Assembly (NCBI GenBank): GCA_053919585.1
Contig: CM132784.1
Reading direction: 5' to 3' (one strand)
Source: Euprymna scolopes
Lineage: Eukaryota
DNA: 64,000 nucleotides
A program made the position numbers and the translations under genes. The notes under the pieces are model-generated. The model did no database searches. It was not told where the DNA came from and saw only the letters and a list, made by a program, of their open reading frames with translations. This document shows, piece by piece, positions 1 through 41,800 of this stretch; within the stretch, counting starts at the first letter, position 1; each line of letters starts with the position of its first letter.

Positions 1-3000
1 GGATTCTCTCATCGAAGACGATGAATGAGGATTCAGTATACAATTTTCAGCAGCTTCTAAGCTCTGTGACATCGCATCTATAATTGCAATCCTGCAGACG
101 TCCAGCACACTCCTCTGCAGATGGTAAACTTGCATATGCTCGTCGGTCAAAGATGCTTCTTGAGTGAAAAGATAATCCTGCTTTGCTTCGGGCTTTGAAA
201 CCACAGTGGCATACATATTCATTTTTTCTGGGTGGAGTTTTCAGGTGCTTTGCCTTCATATTTGCACGAAGAGCGTCCCTATGACGATGGCGGTTATTTT
301 CAAATTCTCTAGTCCTTAAAAAACACATCTACTTCCATTCACTGCGATCCTCTGCTGCACTCTCCCAGGAGCTCAGAGAAATTTCACAACGCTTAAGGTT
401 GTCTTTTAGTTCATCCTTGTAACGAAGCAGGGGACGCCCTATTGGGCGGCAAGAATTTTTTAGTTGCCTATAAAAAAGGTTGCTTAGGAACTCTTGAGTC
501 ATCCATTCTCATAAGATGACCCGACCACCGCATTTGTCTCCTGATCAAAAATGATTCAATACCAGTGATTTCACATCTCTCCAGCAATTCACTCTTTGGA
601 ACACGATTCTACCATCCAACATTGCAAATAGAACACAGGCATCTCATATAGAAGGAATCAAGTTGAATTATATACTTGCGATACAAGGTCAAGGTTTCAG
701 CACAGAAGAGTAGGCAGAACAACAGATTTGTAGACTGCTACCTTCTCTTTTAGAGCCGCATCATGTCTGTTACAGAGTCTTTATCGCAACCTACTAAATG
801 CCTTACTAGCTTTACTGGTTCTACTGTGGATGTCCTTTTCAAATTTAGCATCATCAGACACAACAGATCCGAGGTAATGTAAAAAAAAAGATACGGTTTT
901 CAAAGCTTTACCCGCAACATATGTCATTGGGTTTAAAGAGGGTATATCATTTTGTTTCGGCTGGTGAATGAGTCTTTGTTATGCTAATTGTAAGACGGAA
1001 GGCCTTACGTGCATCAGAGAAGCTATTGAGGATGTTCTGCATGGCATCAAGATTTTGGGTGACAAGAGCACAGTCATCGGCATAAAAGAGATCAAGAACA
1101 GTCTGCACAGAAGTCCTGGTTTTGGCCTTGAACCGTTGCTGGTTAAATATTCGTCCACTTCACTAATGCTCAACGCGTACACCTCCCGAGGTGTTCCTGA
1201 AAGGTGTCTTTAGCATTACCCAAAAGAAAAAAGAGCAAATAGGATCGGGGCAAGGATATATCCTTGCTTAGTTCCATTTGACACTTTAAATGTTCAGAGC
1301 CAGATCGTACTTGTCGTCAGTGAAAGGAGACAATCACATTTAACATACCGAACCTCCTCAAAACAGTCCACAAGGCATCCTTGGAGACGGTATCAAATGC
1401 CTATGTAAGGTCAACGAATGAAACAACCAGGTCATTATTCTGATCCCTCGCTTTCTCGTGTAGTTGGCGCAGGCTTAAGATTATGTCCACAATGCTCCTT
1501 TCTGCTCTAAAACCATACTGGCTTTCTAGGAATAAAGTTTTACAAATTGAACCATTGTGTCTGTTTAAGATTGCACGAGCTAGAATCTTACCAGCAACAT
1601 ATAAAAGAGTAATTGCTCCATGGTTATCACACTCACACTTATTTCCTTTGTGCTTAAACAGGTGTATAACTGATGCTTTTTTGAACTGTTGTGGCACGGC
1701 ACCAAGTTCTCATATAAATGAAAACAGGGCACTTAGTTTCCTGATTAGCAGTTTGCTTCCACATTTGTATACTTGCGCAGGTATGTCGCGATCACCTGGA
1801 GCCTTACTATTTGAAAGTTGCTTCACAACCCATTCAATCTCCAACATGGATGAACAAGCAAGTTCCTCGATGATTGGCCTCTGAGGAATATCATCAATCA
1901 CTTCCCAATCCATTGTCGATTCTCTGTTTAAAATATTTGAAAAGTGTTCAGCCAAGCGCTTTGTAATTTATTTCTTATCAGTGAAGAGAATGCCATTCGA
2001 CAAAAATATTGGAGATGCCCCCTTGAAATGGGTTCAAACACCTCCTTGAGGTTTTGGTAGAATGATTTAAAATCACATTTATCCGCCACATCTTGTAAGG
2101 CCTTAGCTTTTAACTCCAACCACTTTTGTTTCATTTTCCGGAGCGGAGATTTTGACCACTCTAAAAGCCTTGTGTTTCACTGAAGAATTTTTGTCAGTAA
2201 TCCACACTTGATGGGTTTGATGCATGTTATTGAGCAAAGGGAGGATAGTTGGATAATTTTCATCAAACCAATCTTGGTTTTTCCTCCGCACATATTCTAA
2301 TGATTCTTTGCCAGAGTCATACAATGCAGTTTTAAACTCCCTCCAAGATGCACCAATGTCATTTCCACATACAATGGAGGACAGCTTTTCATCAGTAGCC
2401 TTTTGAAACGAGTGCATTGTCTCCCTAACCTTCAACTTGCCTACATCAATTCTCTTGAACGAATTACGTTGATTTCGAACAGGGCGTTTGGTTTTCATCC
2501 TGACTGTGAAGCAGATCAATGTATGATCTGACCAACATTCCCCGATATTGTAAGAGCGTGTAACATTTATATCTTGTCTATGAGAACGACGTACAATGAC
2601 ATAGTCAATGAGATGGTAATTATTAGACCGGGGATGCTTCCAACTGGATTTCTTGCCATTAGGCAGGTGAAACACTGTATTAGTGAGCAAAAGATCAAAT
2701 TCACTGCAAAGAGAAAATAAGAGAACACCGTTTGAGTTGACTTTACCAATTCTGTGTGAACCAATGACATTTCTCCAAAATTGTGTATCATTACCCACAC
2801 GAGTATTGAAGTCACACAGACCTTGTTCACGTAAAGACGAGTAAAACCTCTCTTTTAGCTCATCAGATGAATTAAGTGTAGATGCATGGCAACTCAAAAA
2901 TGTGGCATATTTGTCCTTTCCTACTGCAACGCGCAAGGACATAAGTCTGTCATTTATACTAACGGGCAGGGACTCAAGAATTTTGGTTATATCATTCCTG

Positions 3001-3980
3001 ATAGCAAAACCAACACCAGATTCACGTTTCTCAGAACTTGGTTTTCCAATCCAATAAAAAGTGAATCCACCTTCAACTTCGTCTAGCTGTCCTGCATCAA
3101 CAAACCTAGTTTCGGAAAAGGCTGCAACACACGTACAATGATAGCGGCTTTTCTTTCAGGTTTCTTTTTGTTATCTTGAAGTGTTCTTACATTCCAAATC
3201 GCAATGAACATATTTGTTCCATGTATTTTGTTTCTATTCTTGATTTGGATCCAAATATTGGATGCCCAGATATCTGCACCTGATGACAGGAACAAGAGCA
3301 AGTAAACAATTTATAGGTCATCTTTTATAGACCCCTCCCCATGAAGAGGAAAGCAGTGGCATCCTATAAAAAACTGCTTTGTTATGAAAGGAGGACGCGA
3401 GTCACACAATTACTTGCGGGTGTTGTGAAAAAAAGGCCATCTACCTTTCACCGCCTATGTGCAATGTTCATGTTAGGAACTACTAACGACATCGTTTACC
3501 TGTTTCCATCACAATCCTATCATCGCCACAGAATTTATTGTTATAAATTAAAATAAATAAAAAGAACACATATTGATGTGCCAAACCTTAAGCTTAAATG
3601 AGTGAAAATGGTTCACTGAACAACCGGCGCTTTCATTTGTTTAAATTGGTCATTGCTTGTGCTAAACAAAGCACTCTCCCTCTATCGAATTGACATGGTC
3701 TGTACAGTTGTACATTGTGTCACACGTCAGATGATATAAACGATCGCAGGATTTTCTTGTAAGAGTGTTCTATCTCCTAGATCAGTTGTGAGCCAACACT
3801 AAAGGGCCTGATCCAGCCTTGTAAGCTTTCTGTACGGCTGGGCACCATACCAGCTATTTCTTGGTTCTTGGCCCTTAGTGTTAGTTCACTCTGGTGGACA
3901 TTTCGCTCAGTGGTGCTGCACCAACACAGGCCCCCTCACAAGGTTTTGCAGACCTGCTGAGGCCAGTACTCAGGTAATAT
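1..3980 (-). mobile_element. Decayed, near full-length RTE-clade LINE (APE endonuclease + RT + C-terminal Cys/His motif)
   Basis: Collinear frameshifted ORF pieces: IAIWNVRTL (3083-3301); CDFNTRVG, HLIDYVIVR, WSDH, KNQDWFDEN (2103-2942); KAPGDRDIPAQVYK and ESQYGFRAERS...FVDLT (1401-1955); YVCHCGF...GLSFHSR (47-328). The 5' boundary is approximate. Confidence 0.9.
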
Positions 3981-4451
3981 TTCTTAGATGTAGCAAGTGA
4001 GAGATTTAGGAGATGAGTGATCTCTGNNNNNNNNNNNNNNNNNNNNNNNNNNNNNNNNNNNNNNNNNNNNNNNNNNNNNNNNNNNNNNNNNNNNNNNNNN
4101 NNNNNNNNNNNNNNNNNNNNNNNNNNNNNNNNNNNNNNNNNNNNNNNNNNNNNNNNATATACTTATTAGTATATAAATTTGAATATATAAAAATTCCAGT
4201 AATTGTCATAAAGCAATAAAATTAAAGTAAAACTCAATTATTTAAGCTTCATGATCATCAGTTTTCATAATCGAGCATGCATATAATATTTTCGCAAAAA
4301 TCAAGACAACAAAATATAAATGAGAAAATCTTCTTGCGCATTTTCTTATGCGCTACAAGTGTTTCATAACTGTTTGGAAATTTTAAATATCATATCATTT
4401 TAAAATATTCCAAAACAGCTACTCATCAGACGGCAAAATACACTATTTATA

Positions 4452-16920: not shown

Positions 16921-17244
16921 TAGCACCTAGGATGTTCTTTTGTTTGTTATTCTTAGACATAAAACTATAATAAAAAATAAAGTTTTTATTATTAGACATT
17001 GTATTTTTTCCCTAAAACAACAGTTTAAGAGACCTACAATAAAGCGATGGACAATGGAAATTACTTGATAAAGAATAAAATGTCATAATTTCGTGAATAT
17101 CGCATGAATTTAAATAAAATTATGGGAAATAACTAACCTTAACCTTAGTCTTTTGATGATATAATTTTATTTTTTTTCTGACGTATATTTAGCGAAGTAT
17201 TTATATTTTACTAATTTGCAATAAAGCGATTGCTATAGTTTATA

Positions 17245-17610
17245 CATACATACAAACATACATGCATACATGATGATTGCAACGTCTTGTCAGACGAGTG
17301 CCACTCCTTCAGACACTTAAAGTCCATGAGCCCCAAAATGACTTCCATCGCCACAGGACCATTTTAATAGACAGATGCCTGAGAGAGTATCTATACACAG
17401 ATGATGTTACAGAGTCTTAGCTTTGTACGACAGCTAAGTCTCTCTCTCGGTTCAAAATGTTGAGATCCAGCAACAAGCAAGAGCAAGATAGCCAGCAACA
17501 AATTAAACTGCAGATCAGCTTAATGCGGGTACTGGTCTCCCGCTTTATGTTTTTTTTTATATCAGAGATTTGCTTCTTCTGGAAAGGTTGCCTTCACTAC
17601 GGCTTACGGG
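17245..17610 (-). mobile_element. Non-autonomous RTE-related short element/SINE (copy 1; head runs into an N-block)
   Basis: Highly similar to 59445-59770. Carries the shared 5' module and a 3' cgtct-gaca-agacg hairpin followed by a (TATG)n tail. Confidence 0.7.
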
Positions 17611-26870: not shown

Positions 26871-27956
26871 TAGATTCATTTTTTTTTTGTGAACTGTTAT
26901 CCTCAACTTCCTAGTTGTTGTTTCAACGTGTTTCGGGCAACTTATCCTCGAGCTTTCTTTAGGTAAATAACCGAAGGAGTGTCTTAACTGTATATCCAGT
27001 AATTTCTCCCTCCGTAGTTGTTGGTGTCTTACCACGTTTTGGCCAACTAATCTTCTGTTCTGGATTGGGTAGGATTGAAACCGCTATCTTCAGACAATGC
27101 TCACTTTTCAACGCCTCTATCAAGTGTAGCACGGGCCCCAAAAGGTTGGATCTTTTGGTTTTATAAATTCAAGTTTTCTTTCTTACTCTTATCTGATCTT
27201 CTATTATCGGTTCCGTACTTAATGGCATTATATATTGTTCTTTTAATTTTTTGATTGGAATCCTTTGAGATAAGTAATTTGTGTATTTATTTGCGGACTG
27301 TTATCTTCATTTAAACATGGTGAAACAACAACTATAAAAATGAGAATAACAGTTCGCATATAAATCAATAAATAAATACACAAATCTCTCATCTCAAAGG
27401 AATCCAATAATAACAAACAACATATAACTTTCATATTTTTTTTTCAAAGACCAATATAATAATATTCTTATAAATACTCAAAATATCATCCGTGCACTTC
27501 ACGGCAACGCCCTAACCTAGAAATCCAAACTTGCGTGACGTTTGGAAGAGTAAACTACACGATAGCATTCCAAGCTACTGTTATGCACGTTTACAAATCA
27601 TCAATCGAATCTATGTCACGTAGACATAGCTGAGTTTCTACCAATAAAAACTTGCAAACATAGTAATCCATGACATTTAAGTCTGGTGTTTTTGAGAGCC
27701 AATCCTCTAGTGCAATAAAATAGGGAATAAGAAATTAAATCAAAACTCTTGTTGTGTGAGCTTTTGCGCCATCTTGCGGCCATGTTTATGCTTTGCCATC
27801 CATTACATTTCTTATATCGTGTAAAATTTGTTGGCACATCTTTTGACATAAACTTGTTAACTTACTGTTTTCTTCTTACGGTCGAGACTATGATAATACA
27901 TTTACGACCTCAAATATCCCGCTTTTTCTAGCGACCACGCTATATAATATGAATTA

Positions 27957-36447: not shown

Positions 36448-36475
<28 letters not shown>

Positions 36476-39400
36476 ATTCAATTTTCACCCCAAACAAGGC
36501 ACAGTGCCACTTTGAAGCAGGGGGCTACTATTAGGGAATTAATTAGCGGGGTCATTATGAAGGGAGAAGAGTAGAAAGATGTTTGTTAACATTACACTTG
36601 AACTTCTGCATATCATTGCAGTTGGGAAAGCAGAATCCCGGAAGGGAGTTCCAAAGACCCGCAGTTCTGGGGAAGAAACTATTGGAGTAAAAGGCTTTCT
36701 TGCACCTAGGGATCTCCACTGTAAAGGGATGAGACTTAGTAGCTTGTCGGGTTTGTCGGGGGTAGTTACGTCGGGGAGGTACAAGTGTTTGCAGTTCGTC
36801 AGAGCATTCACCATTAAAGTATTTGTAGAACAGGCAGAGGGATGCAACATCTCGTCGATGGGACAGAGGTTGAAGCCCAGATGACAGTTCAGGACCTATC
36901 AGGTTTGCGACTCTTTTTTGAACCCTGTCCAGGAGCGAGAGACAAGCAGCAGATGCACCAGCCCAGATGTGACAACAGTACTCCATACATGGGCGAATGG
37001 TTGCCTTATAGAGGTATAGGATACTGGCAGGCGTAAGTAGTTTTCTAGCACGGTAGAGGGAGCCAACCTTCCTTGCAGCAGCCTTGGCAATGCTCTCAAT
37101 GTATCTATTCCAGTTCATATTCCCTGTAAACGTTAGGCCGAGGAGTTTAAAAGAAGTACTTTCAGGCAATGTGTTCTTGGCCATTGCTATTGGTGGTAGA
37201 GAAGGTTTCTTGTAGTTATTGAAGGAAACAAGCTTAGTCTTAGCAGCATTGAATGAGACCAACCATTTTTGTCCCCATTCCACTACGGATTGGAGGTCAT
37301 CCTCTAGTGTTTCTGCCATTTTCTTGGATATGTGTTCATTTGTTTTCCCCTCATATCTGTTATAGAGAGTGGTGTCATCGGCAAATATACCCATCTCCGA
37401 AACAATATTATCAGGGAGGTCGTTTATGAATATCAGGAACAATAGAGGTCCAAGGATAGACCCCTGAGGCACTCCCGCATTTATGTCATATTGTTTGGAT
37501 GTACGTCCGTCGAGGACAACTTTGATTTTTCTATTACTTAAGAAGGATTTAATTACGTTATGAATTCTTCCAGTGATTCCATATGATCTAATTTTCCTTA
37601 GAAGACCATCGTGCCATACCCTGTCAAAAGCCTTAGATATATCAAGGGCCACCGCTCTACCCTCCCCTGTTTTATCCAATGAACGGTATATACGTTCAGA
37701 AACTACAGTTAAGATATCTGCTGTTGAACGGGCTTGCCTGAATCCATATTGTTTGTCAGTCAAGAGTTTAGCAGCTGTTAGGTGCTGGACTAGGGCTTTA
37801 TTAACTAAGGACTCAAATATTTTGGCGAAAAGCGGGAGGAGGCTAATGGGGCGATAATTTAGTGGGTCAGTTCTTTCACCAGAATTCTTGAAGACTGGTA
37901 CCACAGAGGCGGTTTTCCAGCAGTCGGGAAAACAAGATTCGTTAAGGCATTTATTGTAAAGTTTGGACAGAACTGGAGCAACCTCGGCAGAGCATTTTTT
38001 TAATAGCACAGCCGGGATGAGATCTGGTCCACATGCTTTAGAGGTGTCTAGGTTTTTTATAATAGCATGTACCTGAGAAGGGGTGATTTTCAAGTCGTCA
38101 AGTGTGGCGTCTGTTCGCAGAGGAAAATCAGGGAGTGAGTGGTGTACCGAGTTCAGTGTGGAGTTTGAGGCAAACCGACTGGCAAGCAGATTAGCCTTGT
38201 CAGTTGCCGTGCAAGCAACCTCATGATTGTTTGTTAGTGGGGGAATAATTGACTGTCCATTATTAACTACGCTGTTGTAGATTTTCCAAAAATCCCGGGT
38301 TCCTAATTTCTGTGCTTCGATGCGCTTTCTGGTGGTTTCAGAGTAATCTGACTTAGCTGTGTCTATCACTCTCTTACAATTATTTCTAGCTTCTATAAAC
38401 TTCTGTTTATTTGAGCTGGACTTATGTCGGTTGAATCTGCGGAACGCATGCTGCCTTTGACAAATGGCAGCTGCACAAGCAGAAGTAAACCATTGGGGGG
38501 AGTGGGGCTTGCTATAGTATTTCCGTGCGGGAACATGTGCTTCAATAGCAGTTTTGAACCATTCAGTTGTCTCATTTGCACACTGTTCCGCTGGAAGAGT
38601 AAAGATATTTTGCCATGGGGCATCTCTGATGAGCTCCCTGATGGCTTCCCAATCAGCCTTTTTGTAATACCTCGTTGTTTTGAGTAGTGGGTCTTCAGTT
38701 TTAGGGCGAGAATTTAGGCTGATTTCTACCATTATCACAGCGTGATCAGCATTCCCGAGTGGGCTATGGGCATTTGTTGTACAGTCATTGGGAACTGTTG
38801 TCAGAAAGAGATCTAGAAGTGAGGCATGTTGATCGTGCTGGTCTGGGAAACGTGTCGGAAATGTAACCATCTGAGATAGGGAATGAGATATAGAGAAGCT
38901 ATATGTGGCGCTACCAGCTACGTCTGTGTGATTTGAGAATCCTAGCCAGTTACTGTGGTGGACATTGAAGTCACCAAATACATGTATTTGTGCGCTAGTA
39001 TCGAGGGAGAGTGCTATATCTATGCTGTCTGAGACTTTGTTTATTAGGGTACAGTCTTGGTTTGAGGGAGAGCGGTAGAGAAAATATAAGTAGCTAATAT
39101 TGTGTTGCATATTTAGTCTGAAGCACATAAAGGCCTGGCCCTCTGATTCTAGTTTTATTTCTCTAGTTAGGGGGAGGGTGTTTCGAATATAGACTCCAAG
39201 TCCATGCATATGTCTGTCCGAGTCCTTACGGTAGAGTGGGAGATAACCAGGCATGTTAAAGTGGTTAGAGGGTATGGAGGAGTGAAGGTTAGTTTCACTT
39301 AATGCTAAGATATCCGGGGTGTTTACAAGGAGAAATGACTCAACATCATCTAAGTTAGTTCTAAGCCCGCGGATATTAGTAAATGCAAGCCTCAAGGGAG

Positions 39401-40240
39401 GAGGCAGGTTGGTTTTCTTTGAGTTTGGTCCTGGTTTAAACGTAACTTTTGCTTGAGCTGTCATTTCATTTTATTTTATTTAAAAGTTTCAGTTAGGGTG
39501 GATGAGTGAGGGGGTGCTGGACAAGTAGTTGTGCAGAATACCAGACATGCAATACAAGTAGACCATCAGCTGTCCTCACCCACAGGATTGTGGCCTCGGG
39601 AAAGCCCACCGGGGATGAGTGCAGGGTCCCTTTCCATGCGCGACATGGCACTACAAACATCCCGATATTTTACAACTGTTGATGGAGCAGCCGCTCTAAG
39701 CGCTACCAAAGAGTTAGGGCTCCTGTACTATCAGTCGGAAACAGCAGCCAGGAACTGTCAATCCGGTACCCTCAATCCATTAGGCAAAGCCAGCCCAGTC
39801 CAACTGCACTGACATATATGGCACTGAAGCACCCCACTGTGTCCAGTTTAGGGGGATGGGATGTGGCAGGAGTGGGGAAAAGCGGCGTTCATTACCCTAG
39901 TCAGGAAACAAGGTCAACCACTGGGTGATTCAAGCGAGTCCCTGTGATAGTACCTCTACGCCTGGCCAATAGGCAAAGAAGGAGTATGAAAGCCGAGCGA
40001 TAGACAGAGTCTATCTCCTCCTTAAGCAGTTTAGGTTTGCCAACCGGTGATTTGTTTGAGTCACCAGCTCTAGGAAGGTTGTCGTCCAGGACTGAAGAGG
40101 CCTCCCTCCCCTAGGTTTAGTTTCAGAGTTTTCCTTCTCCTAGACGGATGGCCTGGGAAGACCTACGGGTCCATCAGCTCCGAGGGGGTTCGCCCCGCGC
40201 CTGGGTCCTAATCCAGGTATTTCTGCGACCCCGCATGGGT
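36448..40240 (-). mobile_element. Apparently intact single-ORF CR1/Zenon-type LINE with poly(A) tail
   Basis: Uninterrupted 969-aa ORF, ~80-nt 3' UTR, poly(T) on the plus strand at 36448-36475 next to (TA)n, and a GC-richer ~750-nt 5' UTR. Subclade name is from motif recall; the 5' boundary is uncertain. Confidence 0.9.
36555..39464 (-). CDS. LINE endonuclease-reverse transcriptase polyprotein
   Basis: APE motifs TNIRGL, LSET, GDFN, LDL, ADH; RT motifs NYRPISLL, QYGFR, LDISKAFD, GVPQGSILGP, FADD, LLG. Confidence 0.97.
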   Translation of the reverse strand: MTAQAKVTFKPGPNSKKTNLPPPLRLAFTNIRGLRTNLDDVESFLLVNTPDILALSETNLHSSIPSNHFNMPGYLPLYRKDSDRHMHGLGVYIRNTLPLTREIKLESEGQAFMCFRLNMQHNISYLYFLYRSPSNQDCTLINKVSDSIDIALSLDTSAQIHVFGDFNVHHSNWLGFSNHTDVAGSATYSFSISHSLSQMVTFPTRFPDQHDQHASLLDLFLTTVPNDCTTNAHSPLGNADHAVIMVEISLNSRPKTEDPLLKTTRYYKKADWEAIRELIRDAPWQNIFTLPAEQCANETTEWFKTAIEAHVPARKYYSKPHSPQWFTSACAAAICQRQHAFRRFNRHKSSSNKQKFIEARNNCKRVIDTAKSDYSETTRKRIEAQKLGTRDFWKIYNSVVNNGQSIIPPLTNNHEVACTATDKANLLASRFASNSTLNSVHHSLPDFPLRTDATLDDLKITPSQVHAIIKNLDTSKACGPDLIPAVLLKKCSAEVAPVLSKLYNKCLNESCFPDCWKTASVVPVFKNSGERTDPLNYRPISLLPLFAKIFESLVNKALVQHLTAAKLLTDKQYGFRQARSTADILTVVSERIYRSLDKTGEGRAVALDISKAFDRVWHDGLLRKIRSYGITGRIHNVIKSFLSNRKIKVVLDGRTSKQYDINAGVPQGSILGPLLFLIFINDLPDNIVSEMGIFADDTTLYNRYEGKTNEHISKKMAETLEDDLQSVVEWGQKWLVSFNAAKTKLVSFNNYKKPSLPPIAMAKNTLPESTSFKLLGLTFTGNMNWNRYIESIAKAAARKVGSLYRARKLLTPASILYLYKATIRPCMEYCCHIWAGASAACLSLLDRVQKRVANLIGPELSSGLQPLSHRRDVASLCLFYKYFNGECSDELQTLVPPRRNYPRQTRQATKSHPFTVEIPRCKKAFYSNSFFPRTAGLWNSLPGFCFPNCNDMQKFKCNVNKHLSTLLPS

Positions 40241-40454
40241 AGTTAATATTTATTGGTTATTTAGGTTAATATCTCCTGGAAAATCGGGCATTTAGGTTAG
40301 CTTCTACAGAAGATTTTCACTCCTCAAGTGTGGTTTAAAAAGGGCATTATTATGCTGTCCATTTTCATTTATACTGAGAGAGGGCATACGTAAAAATTCA
40401 TGCAGTGGAAGCAGTTAAATTTGCTACAGTATTGGATCGAGAGAGTCGAGTTGA

Positions 40455-40556
40455 TGTATGGTTAGATATAGTTTTGTAAGTTTAGCAATGTATGGTTAGA
40501 TATGGTTTAGTAGGTTTAGGAATGTATGGTTAGATATGGTTTAGTAGGTTTAGGAA
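40455..40556. repeat. 3 x 34-bp tandem repeat
   Basis: Unit tgtatggttagatatggtttagtaggtttaggaa. Confidence 0.9.
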
Positions 40557-41754
40557 TTAGGATAAAGTGCTAGAGTATGATCTACTTTCTATTAGAAATT
40601 CTGATTTGGTGCCCAAACCGGACATTTAGTAAGACTGAAAGATTAGATATGTTCAGTATAGAGACAAGAGAACATTTGAAATGGAGTACAGTTATACCTG
40701 ATAGATATAGGTTATTGCATATTCTGTAAGTATAGTAAAAGTATAGATGGATGGATAAGTAGTATTGTATACGAATGCATGGAATTTTAGACAATTTGAG
40801 TAAGTTGCCTTTAGACTACAACTAAGGAGAATGACTTCGCCTTTCTCTTAATATCCGGAAGTTTTTATTTCAATGAGTACCGGTTTAGTTTGTGTAATAA
40901 TTATTGCAATACTATCTCTTAATAAAGAGATATTAACGGTTACTGTTCATTATAGATTACTTTAAGTCAATGTATTGGACTAAGGCTAGTAAGTATTTAC
41001 TTAGAAGCTTGGTTATGGGTTGGGAGTTATAATCGGGAGCATGCCTAGGAAATTTTAGGTGTTAATGGGTATCGATTTGCGAGTTTGTTAAGGTCAAGGG
41101 CGGAGAGCAAGGACCCATCTAAGTTACGGGAGACGGATTTGTTTAGTGTCAACTTAGGAAGTAGAGCAGATTTGATTTGTTAGTGATCAGGAGAAAGAGA
41201 ATTTAAGTAAAAAATAATAAGGTTTGTCATGCAAAACAGACAAGGCAGTCATCTTGGAGGTAAAGTATCTATAGGAGGTACTTGCTTAGTATACAAGCAG
41301 CAGTATTTTGTAGTTTGGAGAGGAATTTTAGGTACAATAGTTTCATGACTTATTGCAAAAGTCCGTAGTCAAGGTGAGGGACGATGTACTTCTAATATTG
41401 AAACTGGGTTTTTCTAATTTTAAAAGTAGTTGACTAGAGTGTTATTAGGTGTTCTACTTTGCTTAGGGATAGAATAAAGATTTAAGGTAATATTCAGGGT
41501 GATATAAGCAGTTTCATGAGGATTGGATATATGATCACTGGATGTTGAACTGCTCAGGAGGATTCTTGTATCAATTAAGAAGGATGTCTTGGTGATATAA
41601 GATTTGAGAAATTAAGAGTCTGGGGATACAGAGAGCTTTGAGCCGATGAGGATTCAGTATAGGCGATTTTATATAGGTAACAAAGGTGGTTTAGTTTAGT
41701 ACGCACGTATTGTACATATTAAGTATACTGCTTCAGTTCAATCCTCTAACGCAA

Positions 41755-41800
<46 letters not shown>

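What the first reader, a model, noticed from the sequence alone, without database searches (positions are those of the whole stretch)
40100..40240. Same ~30-nt 5'-UTR module in LINEs of different clades and in a non-autonomous repeat
Seen (minus strand): GGCCATCCGTCTAGGAGAAGGAAAACTCTGA upstream of the CR1/Zenon ORF (40123-40153); GGCAACCTTTCTAGGAGAAGCAAATCTCTGA in the short repeat (59717-59747, variant at 17562-17592); and a more diverged CAACTGATCTAGGAGATAGAACACTCT upstream of the RTE ORF (3762-3788). All are in sense orientation near the 5' end. From recall, such a motif occurs in RTE 5' UTRs. Inference: it is a portable cis-element (promoter, translation or RNA-processing signal) shared between single-ORF LINEs of different clades and their parasites.
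Basis: partly seen in the sequence, partly recalled or inferred. Interest (0 to 1): 0.7.

Follow-up and report, generated by a model that had tools for sequence, protein, structure and literature searches.

The report
Structured RTE-type leader module in retrotransposons
A roughly 75-base stretch shared by two unrelated jumping genes and a small parasitic repeat in this mollusc genome is the already described conserved leader domain of RTE retrotransposons. Comparing many copies shows that it folds into a conserved RNA shape whose job is still unknown.

Summary
All four instances sit at the stated coordinates, in sense orientation. A profile built only from foreign sequences finds exactly these four places in the 64-kb window (E 1.7e-12 to 3e-5) and nothing else.

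The module is larger than 30 nt. It is a unit of about 71-78 nt, and it is not new as a sequence. It matches the conserved RTE 5'-UTR domain (the RTE-derived half of the cephalopod 'Ceph-domain') described by Kojima 2018. That paper reports it in RTE LINEs, SINEs and a few LINEs of other clades.

- In the young 5.3-kb LINE it lies 1.6 kb from the 5' end, so it is not near that end.
- In the short repeat family it starts at the 5' end.

What I add:
- It is an integral part of the leader of a non-RTE, CR1-like LINE lineage, and a relative from another organism has it too.
- It forms tandem units at the 5' ends of metagenomic RTE elements.
- It has a covariation-supported fold: a 7-8-bp closing helix, a small hairpin, and a GGAG/CUCU hairpin with an A-rich loop. 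No Rfam family matches.

This points to an RNA-level function; the partner and mechanism are inferred. First-reader notes elsewhere in this genome (structured CR1 leaders, an 'HDV-like' RTE leader) may describe the same element. I did not check them.

The parts
40112..40187 (-). Module unit 1 in the leader of the young LINE ('LINE A')
   Evidence: Covariance model R1: 62.4 bits, E 1.6e-18. External-only nhmmer profile: E 1.7e-12. Present at the same place in all 12 fetched copies.
40170..40177 (-). 5' strand of closing helix P1 (unit 1)
   Evidence: Pairs with 40141-40148 (6 of 8 positions in this copy). The helix is predicted by RNAalifold on a sequence-only alignment and covaries across lineages.
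40150..40163 (-). Small hairpin H1 (GGUC / 6-nt loop / GGCC in this copy)
   Evidence: RNAalifold predicts the 3-bp stem. Other lineages have GCC/GGC, GUC/GAC or GUG/CAC, with unrelated loops.
40141..40148 (-). 3' strand of P1.
40125..40140 (-).
   Evidence: 100% paired in 14 sequences and 97% in 45. The stem is nearly invariant and the loop varies.
40040..40116 (-). Second, diverged unit directly downstream of unit 1
   Evidence: Recognised by eye in alignment A3/A4. The homologous second units of L064 and L067 are found by the model (34 and 23 bits). This copy itself is below E 1.
36457..41756 (-). LINE A: 5.3-kb poly(A)-tailed LINE with a 2.3-kb leader and no ORF1
   Evidence: The boundaries are shared by full-length copies. 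At least 40 copies are 100% identical over 936 nt. There is no sense ORF of 71 aa or more upstream of the pol ORF.
36555..39464 (-). Single ORF of LINE A, 969 aa, endonuclease plus reverse transcriptase
   Evidence: Pfam RVT_1 4.6e-35, Exo_endo_phos_2 2.1e-9.
3749..3825 (-). Module in the leader of the old RTE-like LINE
   Evidence: R1: 67.3 bits, E 3.3e-20 (a seed sequence of the model). External-only profile: E 3e-5 over 64 nt. P1 is 8 bp here (3808-3815 with 3778-3785), H1 is GUG/CAC, and the H2 stem extends to 6 bp.
1..4026 (-). Decayed RTE-like LINE, cut by the window start and by the N run at 4027
   Evidence: Copies elsewhere are about 85% identical. RT fragments hit Pfam. The endonuclease piece is nearest 'craniofacial development protein 2-like' clusters. 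It is 44-55% identical to the ORF of metagenomic element L186.
59441..59749 (-). Short non-autonomous repeat, a 5'-truncated copy. The partial module is at 59706-59755.
   Evidence: All other copies match only from 59749 onwards. R1: 28.8 bits. The 5' strand of P1 is missing. It has a (TGTA)n tail.
17241..17610 (-). Second copy of the short repeat. The visible part of the module is at 17551-17610 and continues into the N run.
   Evidence: The core is mutated (TCCAGAAG). The masked stretch was left as N.

Best explanation
Shown:
- The motif is the core of a 71-78-nt module that belongs to the conserved 5'-UTR domain of RTE-clade LINEs. [quoted passage not shown]
- In this genome it is built into three elements: the leader of an RTE-like LINE, the leader of a very young CR1-like LINE (as two tandem units), and the 5' end of a roughly 330-nt head-less non-autonomous repeat.
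- The sense strand folds as a 7-8-bp helix P1 that encloses a 3-4-bp hairpin H1. P1 is followed without a gap by hairpin H2 (GGAG / 8-nt A-rich loop / CUCU) and a tail ending in AAACC.
- P1 and H1 are kept by compensatory changes. G-U pairs are common, so the constraint acts on the sense-strand RNA.

Inferred:
- The module works on the RNA as a binding platform for a conserved trans-acting factor.
- That factor is more likely a host factor (for example a ribosome- or RNP-associated protein) than the element's own protein. The reason is that LINEs with unrelated proteins and non-coding parasites all keep the module.
- Carrying it would help a transcript to be translated next to, or loaded with, LINE protein. 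That would explain why non-autonomous elements retain or capture it and why it moves between leaders by recombination.
For: Identity with the known domain:
- SINE-like repeats on mis-binned MAG contigs carry the CORE/Ceph box CCTTGGGAAAG. They also carry 22 of the 23 nt that Kojima quotes as the start of the RTE-like part, and about 40 nt further on the exact core.
- In metagenome contigs the module lies roughly 300-650 nt upstream of RTE-like ORFs.

Conservation above the flanks:
- L067 against the window.
- The external profile hits only the four sites.

Structure:
- RNAalifold on the MAFFT alignment A5 predicts P1 and H2.
- On A5, 94.6% of cells are paired, against 25-49% when the partner is slid. 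There are 18 double-change cells, and 0 of 500 shuffles reach the covariation score. Pair types at single P1 positions are CG5/UA5/UG3/GU1, GC8/AU4/CG1/UA1 and AU9/GC4/GU1.
- 45 model-aligned instances give the same picture.
- H1 is predicted separately, with 2 of 3 pairs compensated.

Retention in non-coding elements.
Against:
- Single-sequence folding energies are no better than shuffles (z -0.66 to +0.70).
- The H2 stem is nearly invariant, so its pairing is not proven.
- Many aligned instances come from a few related families of unknown organisms, so covariation counts are inflated by relatedness.
- Identity with Kojima's domain rests on a quoted 23-mer and on context, not on alignment to the Repbase consensus sequences.
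- The binding partner and the benefit are pure inference.
- Tandem units that start exactly at element 5' ends fit a promoter reading at least as well.
- Some relatives of LINE A show no module (L063, L065, L066, L070).
Confidence: 0.6

Rival explanations
1. DNA-level internal promoter or enhancer 'monomer'. Each unit binds transcription factors and directs initiation at its own upstream edge, as the tandem monomers of mouse L1 do. The RNA helix would be secondary.
For: - Units are tandemly repeated with a 71-nt period in metagenomic RTE elements.
- Six of about thirteen visible junctions with unrelated DNA fall at the G run that opens a unit.
- The short repeat family also begins at the unit start.
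- Kojima speculated on binding of a transcriptional regulator.
Against: - Compensatory changes and frequent G-U pairs are not expected for a purely double-stranded DNA site.
- In LINE A the full-length copies start 1.57 kb upstream of the module.
- Pol III-type SINEs with their own head keep it.
Confidence: 0.2
2. A self-cleaving or otherwise processed RNA that defines 5' ends at unit boundaries. It would be either a degenerate HDV-like ribozyme or a new class.
For: - P1 of 7-8 bp encloses a 3-bp hairpin with a 6-8-nt loop and is followed by another hairpin, then C-U-G-A. This superficially resembles P1/P3/P4/J4-2 of HDV-like ribozymes.
- RTE elements are reported to carry such ribozymes (citing Ruminski 2011).
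- Element 5' ends coincide with unit starts.
- An unchecked scan note reports an 'HDV-like ribozyme' of 78 letters in an RTE-like leader elsewhere in this genome.
Against: - No P2 partner for the segment between P1 and H1.
- The H1 loop has no conserved C residues for P1.1, and there is no spacer between P1 and H2.
- Unit starts lie 4-5 nt upstream of P1.
- Genomic copies keep 2-4 uncleaved units.
- No Rfam ribozyme model matches, even at E 1-10.
- A loop-to-tail pseudoknot is only 43% paired.
Confidence: 0.07
3. A passive passenger. A fragment of an RTE leader or of a SINE was captured by the LINE A leader and by the short repeat, and it looks conserved only because the copies are young.
For: - LINE A copies are 100% identical, so within-family identity says nothing.
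- LINE leaders are known to be modular.
- Several LINE A relatives lack the module.
Against: - The module and its position relative to the downstream leader blocks and the ATG are shared with L067 and L064, whose proteins are only 56-58% identical.
- Flanks diverged while the core stayed at 88%.
- Helices are maintained by compensatory changes across lineages.
Confidence: 0.05

Closest known systems
[quoted passage not shown]
   Same: - Sense-strand domain of about 90-100 nt in the middle of RTE leaders.
- Sometimes present twice.
- Reused in SINE bodies, including cephalopod SINEs.
- Exceptionally present in LINEs of other clades (Ingi-3_AC of Aplysia, R4-1_ADi).
- Function unknown.
- The quoted 23-nt start of the SINE version sits directly upstream of this motif in SINE-like repeats.
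   Different: - Here it is carried by a CR1-like LINE lineage and by a head-less non-autonomous repeat.
- In some metagenomic RTE elements it is 5'-terminal and in tandem.
- The paper does not discuss a fold for the domain (its one mention of secondary structure concerns SINE 3' tails), whereas the fold is supported here.
- I could not align directly to the Repbase consensus sequences.
Pr77 hallmark of trypanosomatid retroposons (L1Tc/NARTc, ingi/RIME, SIDER)
   Same: A module of about 77 nt shared by autonomous LINEs and their non-autonomous derivatives, acting in cis on expression. This rests on my own knowledge and on Sanchez-Luque 2011 as cited.
   Different: Pr77 is strictly 5'-terminal and is an HDV-like ribozyme plus promoter. 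This module is internal in two LINEs and fails the HDV-like test. Sequence similarity was not tested.
5' protein-binding RNA of R2 elements and the Alu SRP9/14-binding domain (functional analogies, from my own knowledge)
   Same: Structured RNA outside the 3' tail that recruits a protein and improves retrotransposition of the carrier, including non-coding parasites.
   Different: No binding partner is known here, and there is no sequence or fold relationship.
Tandem promoter monomers of mouse L1 5' UTRs (from my own knowledge)
   Same: Short units repeated head to tail at the 5' end of a LINE, with copies starting at unit edges.
   Different: Mouse monomers are about 200 bp, lineage-specific and not known to be RNA-structured. 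This unit is 71-78 nt, shared between LINE clades, and covaries.

Membership tests
Conserved RTE 5'-UTR domain (Kojima 2018) | Lies in sense orientation in the 5' UTR of RTE-clade LINEs | tested here: met
   Window RTE-like element, 3749-3825. Metagenomic contigs L186, L188, L148, L133, L167, L196, L203 and L157 have RTE-like ORFs downstream of the module.
Conserved RTE 5'-UTR domain (Kojima 2018) | Continuous with the RTE-like part of Ceph-type SINEs, which starts with the quoted 23-mer after a CCTTGGGAAAG box | tested here: met
   The consensus of 26 SINE-like repeats on mis-binned MAG contigs has the box, 22 of the 23 nt, and the core about 40 nt downstream. The 23-mer itself is absent from the window.
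Conserved RTE 5'-UTR domain (Kojima 2018) | Aligns to the Repbase consensus regions (RTE-3_BF 325-423, SepiaSINE 127-213) | not testable with these tools
   No Repbase or Dfam sequences are on hand. The paper's figures and supplements are not held.
Conserved RTE 5'-UTR domain (Kojima 2018) | Internal to the leader; may occur twice | tested here: met
   LINE A: 1.57 kb from the 5' end, with two units. Tandem units in metagenomic elements.
HDV-like self-cleaving ribozyme | Nested double pseudoknot: P2 between the P1-P3 linker and the 3' end, and P1.1 between L3 and the nucleotides after P1 | tested here: not met
   Inspection of 14 aligned lineages (A5) shows no complementary 3' segment, H1 loops without conserved C residues, and no spacer before H2. 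A loop-tail pairing is only 43% paired.
HDV-like self-cleaving ribozyme | Match to curated ribozyme covariance models | tested here: not met
   The Rfam 15 scan at E<=10 over 39400-40500 gave only four weak matches to unrelated families and no ribozyme model. The scan at E<=1 over L142, L157, L186 and L043 gave nothing.
HDV-like self-cleaving ribozyme | Self-cleavage immediately 5' of P1 | not testable with these tools
   This needs a bench assay. Element and unit starts lie 4-5 nt upstream of P1.
tRNA-derived SINE (for the short repeat) | Pol III head derived from tRNA, 5S or 7SL | tested here: not met
   Conservation among 20 copies ends 50-73 nt upstream of CTAGG in a TG/TA run. ARAGORN finds no tRNA in L043-L045.
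Bipartite non-autonomous LINE (for the short repeat) | 5' part and 3' part both derived from a LINE | tested here: inconclusive
   The 5' part is one module unit, closest to the L067/L157 type. The 3' hairpin plus (TGTA)n tail has no identified partner LINE, and LINE A ends in poly(A).
CR1 clade (for LINE A) | Placement in an RT phylogeny with reference elements | not tested
   No labelled references are available. Indirect evidence: 26-31% RT identity to the RTE-like elements, and a C-terminal domain ending in FFPRT..LWNSLP..FK, which I recall as the CR1/L2 type (from memory). CR1-Zenon LINEs dominate some squid genomes.
CR1 clade (for LINE A) | ORF1, and a 3' end with hairpin and microsatellite | tested here: not met
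   No sense ORF of 71 aa or more in the 2.3-kb leader. The element ends in poly(A).
RTE clade (for the element at 1-4026) | RTE-type endonuclease and C-terminal region | tested here: met
   The endonuclease piece is nearest 'craniofacial development protein 2-like' clusters, score 0.94 (a lead). It is 44-55% identical to the L186 ORF across endonuclease, RT and C-terminus. The C-terminal RW.GH..RM...GRP...DR..W pattern is one I recall as typical of BovB/RTE. No phylogeny was done.

The most novel reading that the evidence does not exclude
The fold is a new kind of catalytic or processing RNA. It would cut or mark the transcript at unit boundaries and so create the 5' ends of RTE-type elements and of their parasites. 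It would be exchanged between LINE clades as a cassette.
Probability: 0.07. Interest if true: 0.85.

Novelty: new member of a known kind. Interest (0 to 1): 0.5.

Why it matters
Why unrelated SINEs and LINEs from different phyla share nearly identical internal domains has been an open question since the CORE, V, Deu and Ceph domains were described.

This case shows three things for one such domain:
- It is kept as part of the leader of a second, unrelated LINE lineage.
- It can form tandem 5'-terminal units.
- It has a compact fold maintained by compensatory changes on the sense strand.

That moves the question from 'some regulatory DNA?' to a defined RNA with helices that can be mutated and restored. 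It also gives a covariance model for annotating the domain, which no Rfam family covers.

Tried and rejected
1. Rfam scans found nothing relevant: gathering threshold on the whole window (only a 5S rRNA), and E-value scans on the LINE A leader and on four other loci.
2. I tried by hand to fit HDV-like and hammerhead layouts and rejected both. There is no P2 or P1.1, and no CUGAUGA...GAAA core.
3. An outer stem CUAGG/CCUAG, seen in LINE A and L064, is not kept in L067, the short repeat or the MAG repeat. I dropped it in favour of P1.
4. A pseudoknot between the H1 loop and the AAACC tail is only 43% paired.
5. A pairing AAAUC/GAUUU is present only in some families and overlaps P1, so I rejected it.
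The RTE-like family and the rarer core variants could therefore not be sampled.
8. The look-up of encoding contigs returned no DNA for the long contigs.
9. Literature searches for the motif string and for the C-terminal peptide motif gave only primers and noise. The supplements of the Helicoverpa SINE paper do not contain the core. Ruminski 2011 is not held.
10. Single-sequence folding of the LINE A region and of eight units shows no unusual stability.
11. Clade naming by PDB hits or atlas names is uninformative for LINE A.

Full report
**Observation**

A degenerate 31-mer gives 3 hits in the window against 0.00 expected. A 20-mer core pattern gives 3 hits against 0.02 expected. In the whole 5.9-Gb genome the core pattern occurs 13,503 + 13,447 times, against 5 for the reversed control. 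The motif is therefore a high-copy repeat component.

**The elements that carry it**

*LINE A.* The ORF at 36555-39464 (969 aa) has endonuclease and RT domains.
- At least 40 genomic copies are 100% identical to 39465-40400.
- Twelve copies fetched with flanks define a 5.3-kb element, 36457-41756. Eight share the 5' end at 41756 and three are 5'-truncated; one fetched stretch ends inside the element.
- The element ends in poly(A) and has no ORF1.
- The motif is thus about 1.6 kb from the 5' end and about 650 nt upstream of the ATG, not near the 5' end.

*The RTE-like element (1-4026).* It is an old family with copies about 85% identical, and it extends at least to 4020.
- Its fragments hit RVT_1.
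- Its endonuclease piece is nearest 'craniofacial development protein 2-like' clusters.
- Its C-terminus has a pattern that I know from BovB/RTE (from memory).

*The short repeat.* It is about 330 nt and ends in a long hairpin plus (TGTA)n.
- Twenty other copies show that the family extends 50-73 nt upstream of CTAGG and then loses conservation in a TG/TA run.
- The copy at 59.7 kb is 5'-truncated. The copy at 17.6 kb continues into the N run.
- I used other copies only to locate the family's 5' boundary and left the N runs as they are.
- ARAGORN finds no tRNA head.

**Is it more than a 30-mer?**

Relatives of LINE A (56-58% protein identity) were fetched from marine metagenome assemblies.
- L067 keeps the motif at 88% identity over 41 nt while most of the surrounding leader is unalignable.
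- The order of the parts is the same as in the window: unit 1, a diverged unit 2, a small conserved hairpin, a conserved leader block, then the ATG.
- L064 has diverged versions.
- L063, L065, L066 and L070 show none. They are either 5'-truncated or lack the module.

**Link to the literature**

Kojima 2018 (PMC5786205) reports 'a well-conserved domain' in the 5' UTRs of RTE LINEs from many phyla. According to that paper:
- It is sometimes present twice.
- Unexpectedly, it is also present in Ingi-3_AC (Aplysia) and R4-1_ADi.

The paper prints only one piece of it, a 23-mer that starts the RTE-like part in the SINEs.

A pattern scan of prokaryotic genome contigs gave about 25 scattered single hits. 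It also gave about 30 hits concentrated on contigs of two 'MAGs'. Those contigs carry a SINE-like repeat. Its 26-copy consensus has a tRNA-like head (by eye; ARAGORN calls none), the CCTTGGGAAAG box, 22 of the 23 nt of Kojima's segment, and about 40 nt further on the exact core of this finding.

A metagenome scan returned more than 120 contigs.
- Most belong to one family in which the module is a 71-nt unit repeated head to tail.
- Where enough DNA follows, the downstream ORFs resemble the window's RTE-like pieces. L186 is 44-55% identical; L188, L133, L148, L167, L196, L203 and L157 are more distant.

I conclude that the motif is part of the published RTE leader domain. A direct alignment to the Repbase consensus sequences could not be made.

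**Formal detection**

The hits cover 64-70 nt in the two LINEs.

**Are the two LINEs of different clades?**

- LINE A aligns to the window's RTE-like element only over 180 aa of RT, at 31% identity.
- It aligns to the intact RTE-like ORF of L186 only over 349 aa, at 26% identity. There is no detectable similarity in the endonuclease or the C-terminus.
- LINE A's C-terminal domain is of the type I recall from CR1/L2 elements.
- CR1-Zenon and RTE-BovB are the dominant LINEs of squid genomes.
- No reference phylogeny was possible, so 'different clades' is likely but not shown. LINE A also lacks the ORF1 and the microsatellite tail of classical CR1.

**Structure**

Single-sequence folds of eight units are no more stable than shuffles. 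Even so, several of them show the same layout.

On a MAFFT alignment of 14 units from at least nine lineages (A5), RNAalifold predicts a 7-bp helix P1 and hairpin H2.

Counting pairs on that alignment:
- 94.6% of cells are paired, against 25-49% with the partner slid.
- There are 18 cells with changes on both sides.
- No shuffle out of 500 reaches the covariation score.
- Four consecutive P1 positions are paired in all 14 sequences, with up to four pair types each.

The small hairpin H1 inside P1 is predicted on a second alignment. Its stem is GCC/GGC, replaced by GUC/GAC, GUG/CAC or GGUC/GGCC, and the loops are unrelated.

A covariance model built from A5 finds 45 instances in the loci held, including the second units of L064 and L067. 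Counts on that model-fitted alignment agree: P1 is 86% paired and 7 of 8 pairs have double changes.

The H2 stem is almost invariant. Its closing G-U pair and the many G-U pairs in P1 would be mismatches on the opposite strand, so the constraint is on the sense strand.

Caveats:
- The instances come from related repeat families of unknown organisms.
- The tool warns that relatedness inflates these measures.

**What it is not**

- No Rfam family matches.
- The layout recalls P1/P3/P4 of HDV-like ribozymes, and an unchecked note of this scan calls a 78-letter stretch of an RTE-like leader elsewhere in the genome 'HDV-like'. However, P2 and P1.1 cannot be formed, unit starts are 4-5 nt upstream of P1, and genomic copies keep several uncut units.
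- A loop-tail pseudoknot fails.

**Mechanism**

Shown:
- A conserved, sense-strand, structured module.
- It is present in the leaders of two unrelated LINE lineages.
- It sits at the 5' end of a non-coding repeat and inside SINE bodies.
- It is 5'-terminal and in tandem in some RTE elements.

Inferred:
- It acts on the RNA by recruiting a conserved factor, which I favour being a host factor, because elements with unrelated proteins keep it.
- Non-coding parasites benefit from the same recruitment.

The main rival is a DNA-level promoter monomer. It is favoured by the tandem arrangement and by element 5' ends at unit starts. It is disfavoured by the compensatory changes and by the 1.6-kb upstream start of LINE A. 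No RNA data could be obtained.

**Verdict**

The domain itself is published. The CR1-like carrier, the head-less carrier, the tandem 5'-terminal form and the fold are additions.

Other first-reader notes in this genome mention covarying or pseudoknot-like leaders of CR1-group LINEs. They may concern the same module, but I could not check them.

Noticed in passing
window 39590-39775 and 39996-40019 (minus strand): Two further conserved pieces of the LINE A leader. The first is a block that is 71-83% identical to relatives whose proteins are only 56-58% identical. The second is a small hairpin (GAUAGAC/GUCUAUC) that is compensated in L063 (GAUAGG/CCUAUC). They are candidates for another leader RNA element.
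   Followed up: partly
L078-L121 (GenBank contigs CAXXGD0100000..., 'Rhodospirillales bacterium' MAG, and CAXXMW0100000..., 'Arenicella sp.' MAG): These 'bacterial' MAG contigs of a GTDB species set are packed with an animal SINE-like repeat: a tRNA-like head by eye, a CORE/Ceph box and the RTE leader domain. In L078 part of the repeat forms a 123-nt tandem array. This is probably host DNA mis-binned into the MAGs.
   Followed up: partly
window 56490-56608 (+): A 5S rRNA gene: Rfam RF00001, 72 bits, E 3e-13.
   Followed up: no
window about 59495-59545 (minus strand), and the same part of the copy at 17.3 kb: The short repeat ends in a long perfect hairpin of about 15 bp, followed about 35 nt later by a (TGTA)n tail. 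This is the kind of 3' end used by stringent L2/CR1-type LINEs. The partner LINE was not identified, and LINE A ends in poly(A).
   Followed up: no
window 36457-41756: LINE A is extremely young. The 40 best genomic matches, out of 3,930 candidates, are 100% identical over 936 nt. Full-length copies are 99.7-99.96% identical over 2.4-5.3 kb.
   Followed up: partly
window 50608-51896: A tandem array of a 43-nt unit, about 30 copies at 95-99% identity in the core. It is already noted by the scan as a minisatellite.
   Followed up: no
window 27157-27195 (minus strand): A weak hit of the covariance model R1 (12 bits, E 0.26). It is probably chance or a very decayed fragment.
   Followed up: no
L186 9-500 (minus strand) and window 50-328 (minus strand): The RTE-like ORFs continue past the usual C-terminal motif into two C2H2-like zinc-finger motifs (C..C...H...H).
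   Followed up: no
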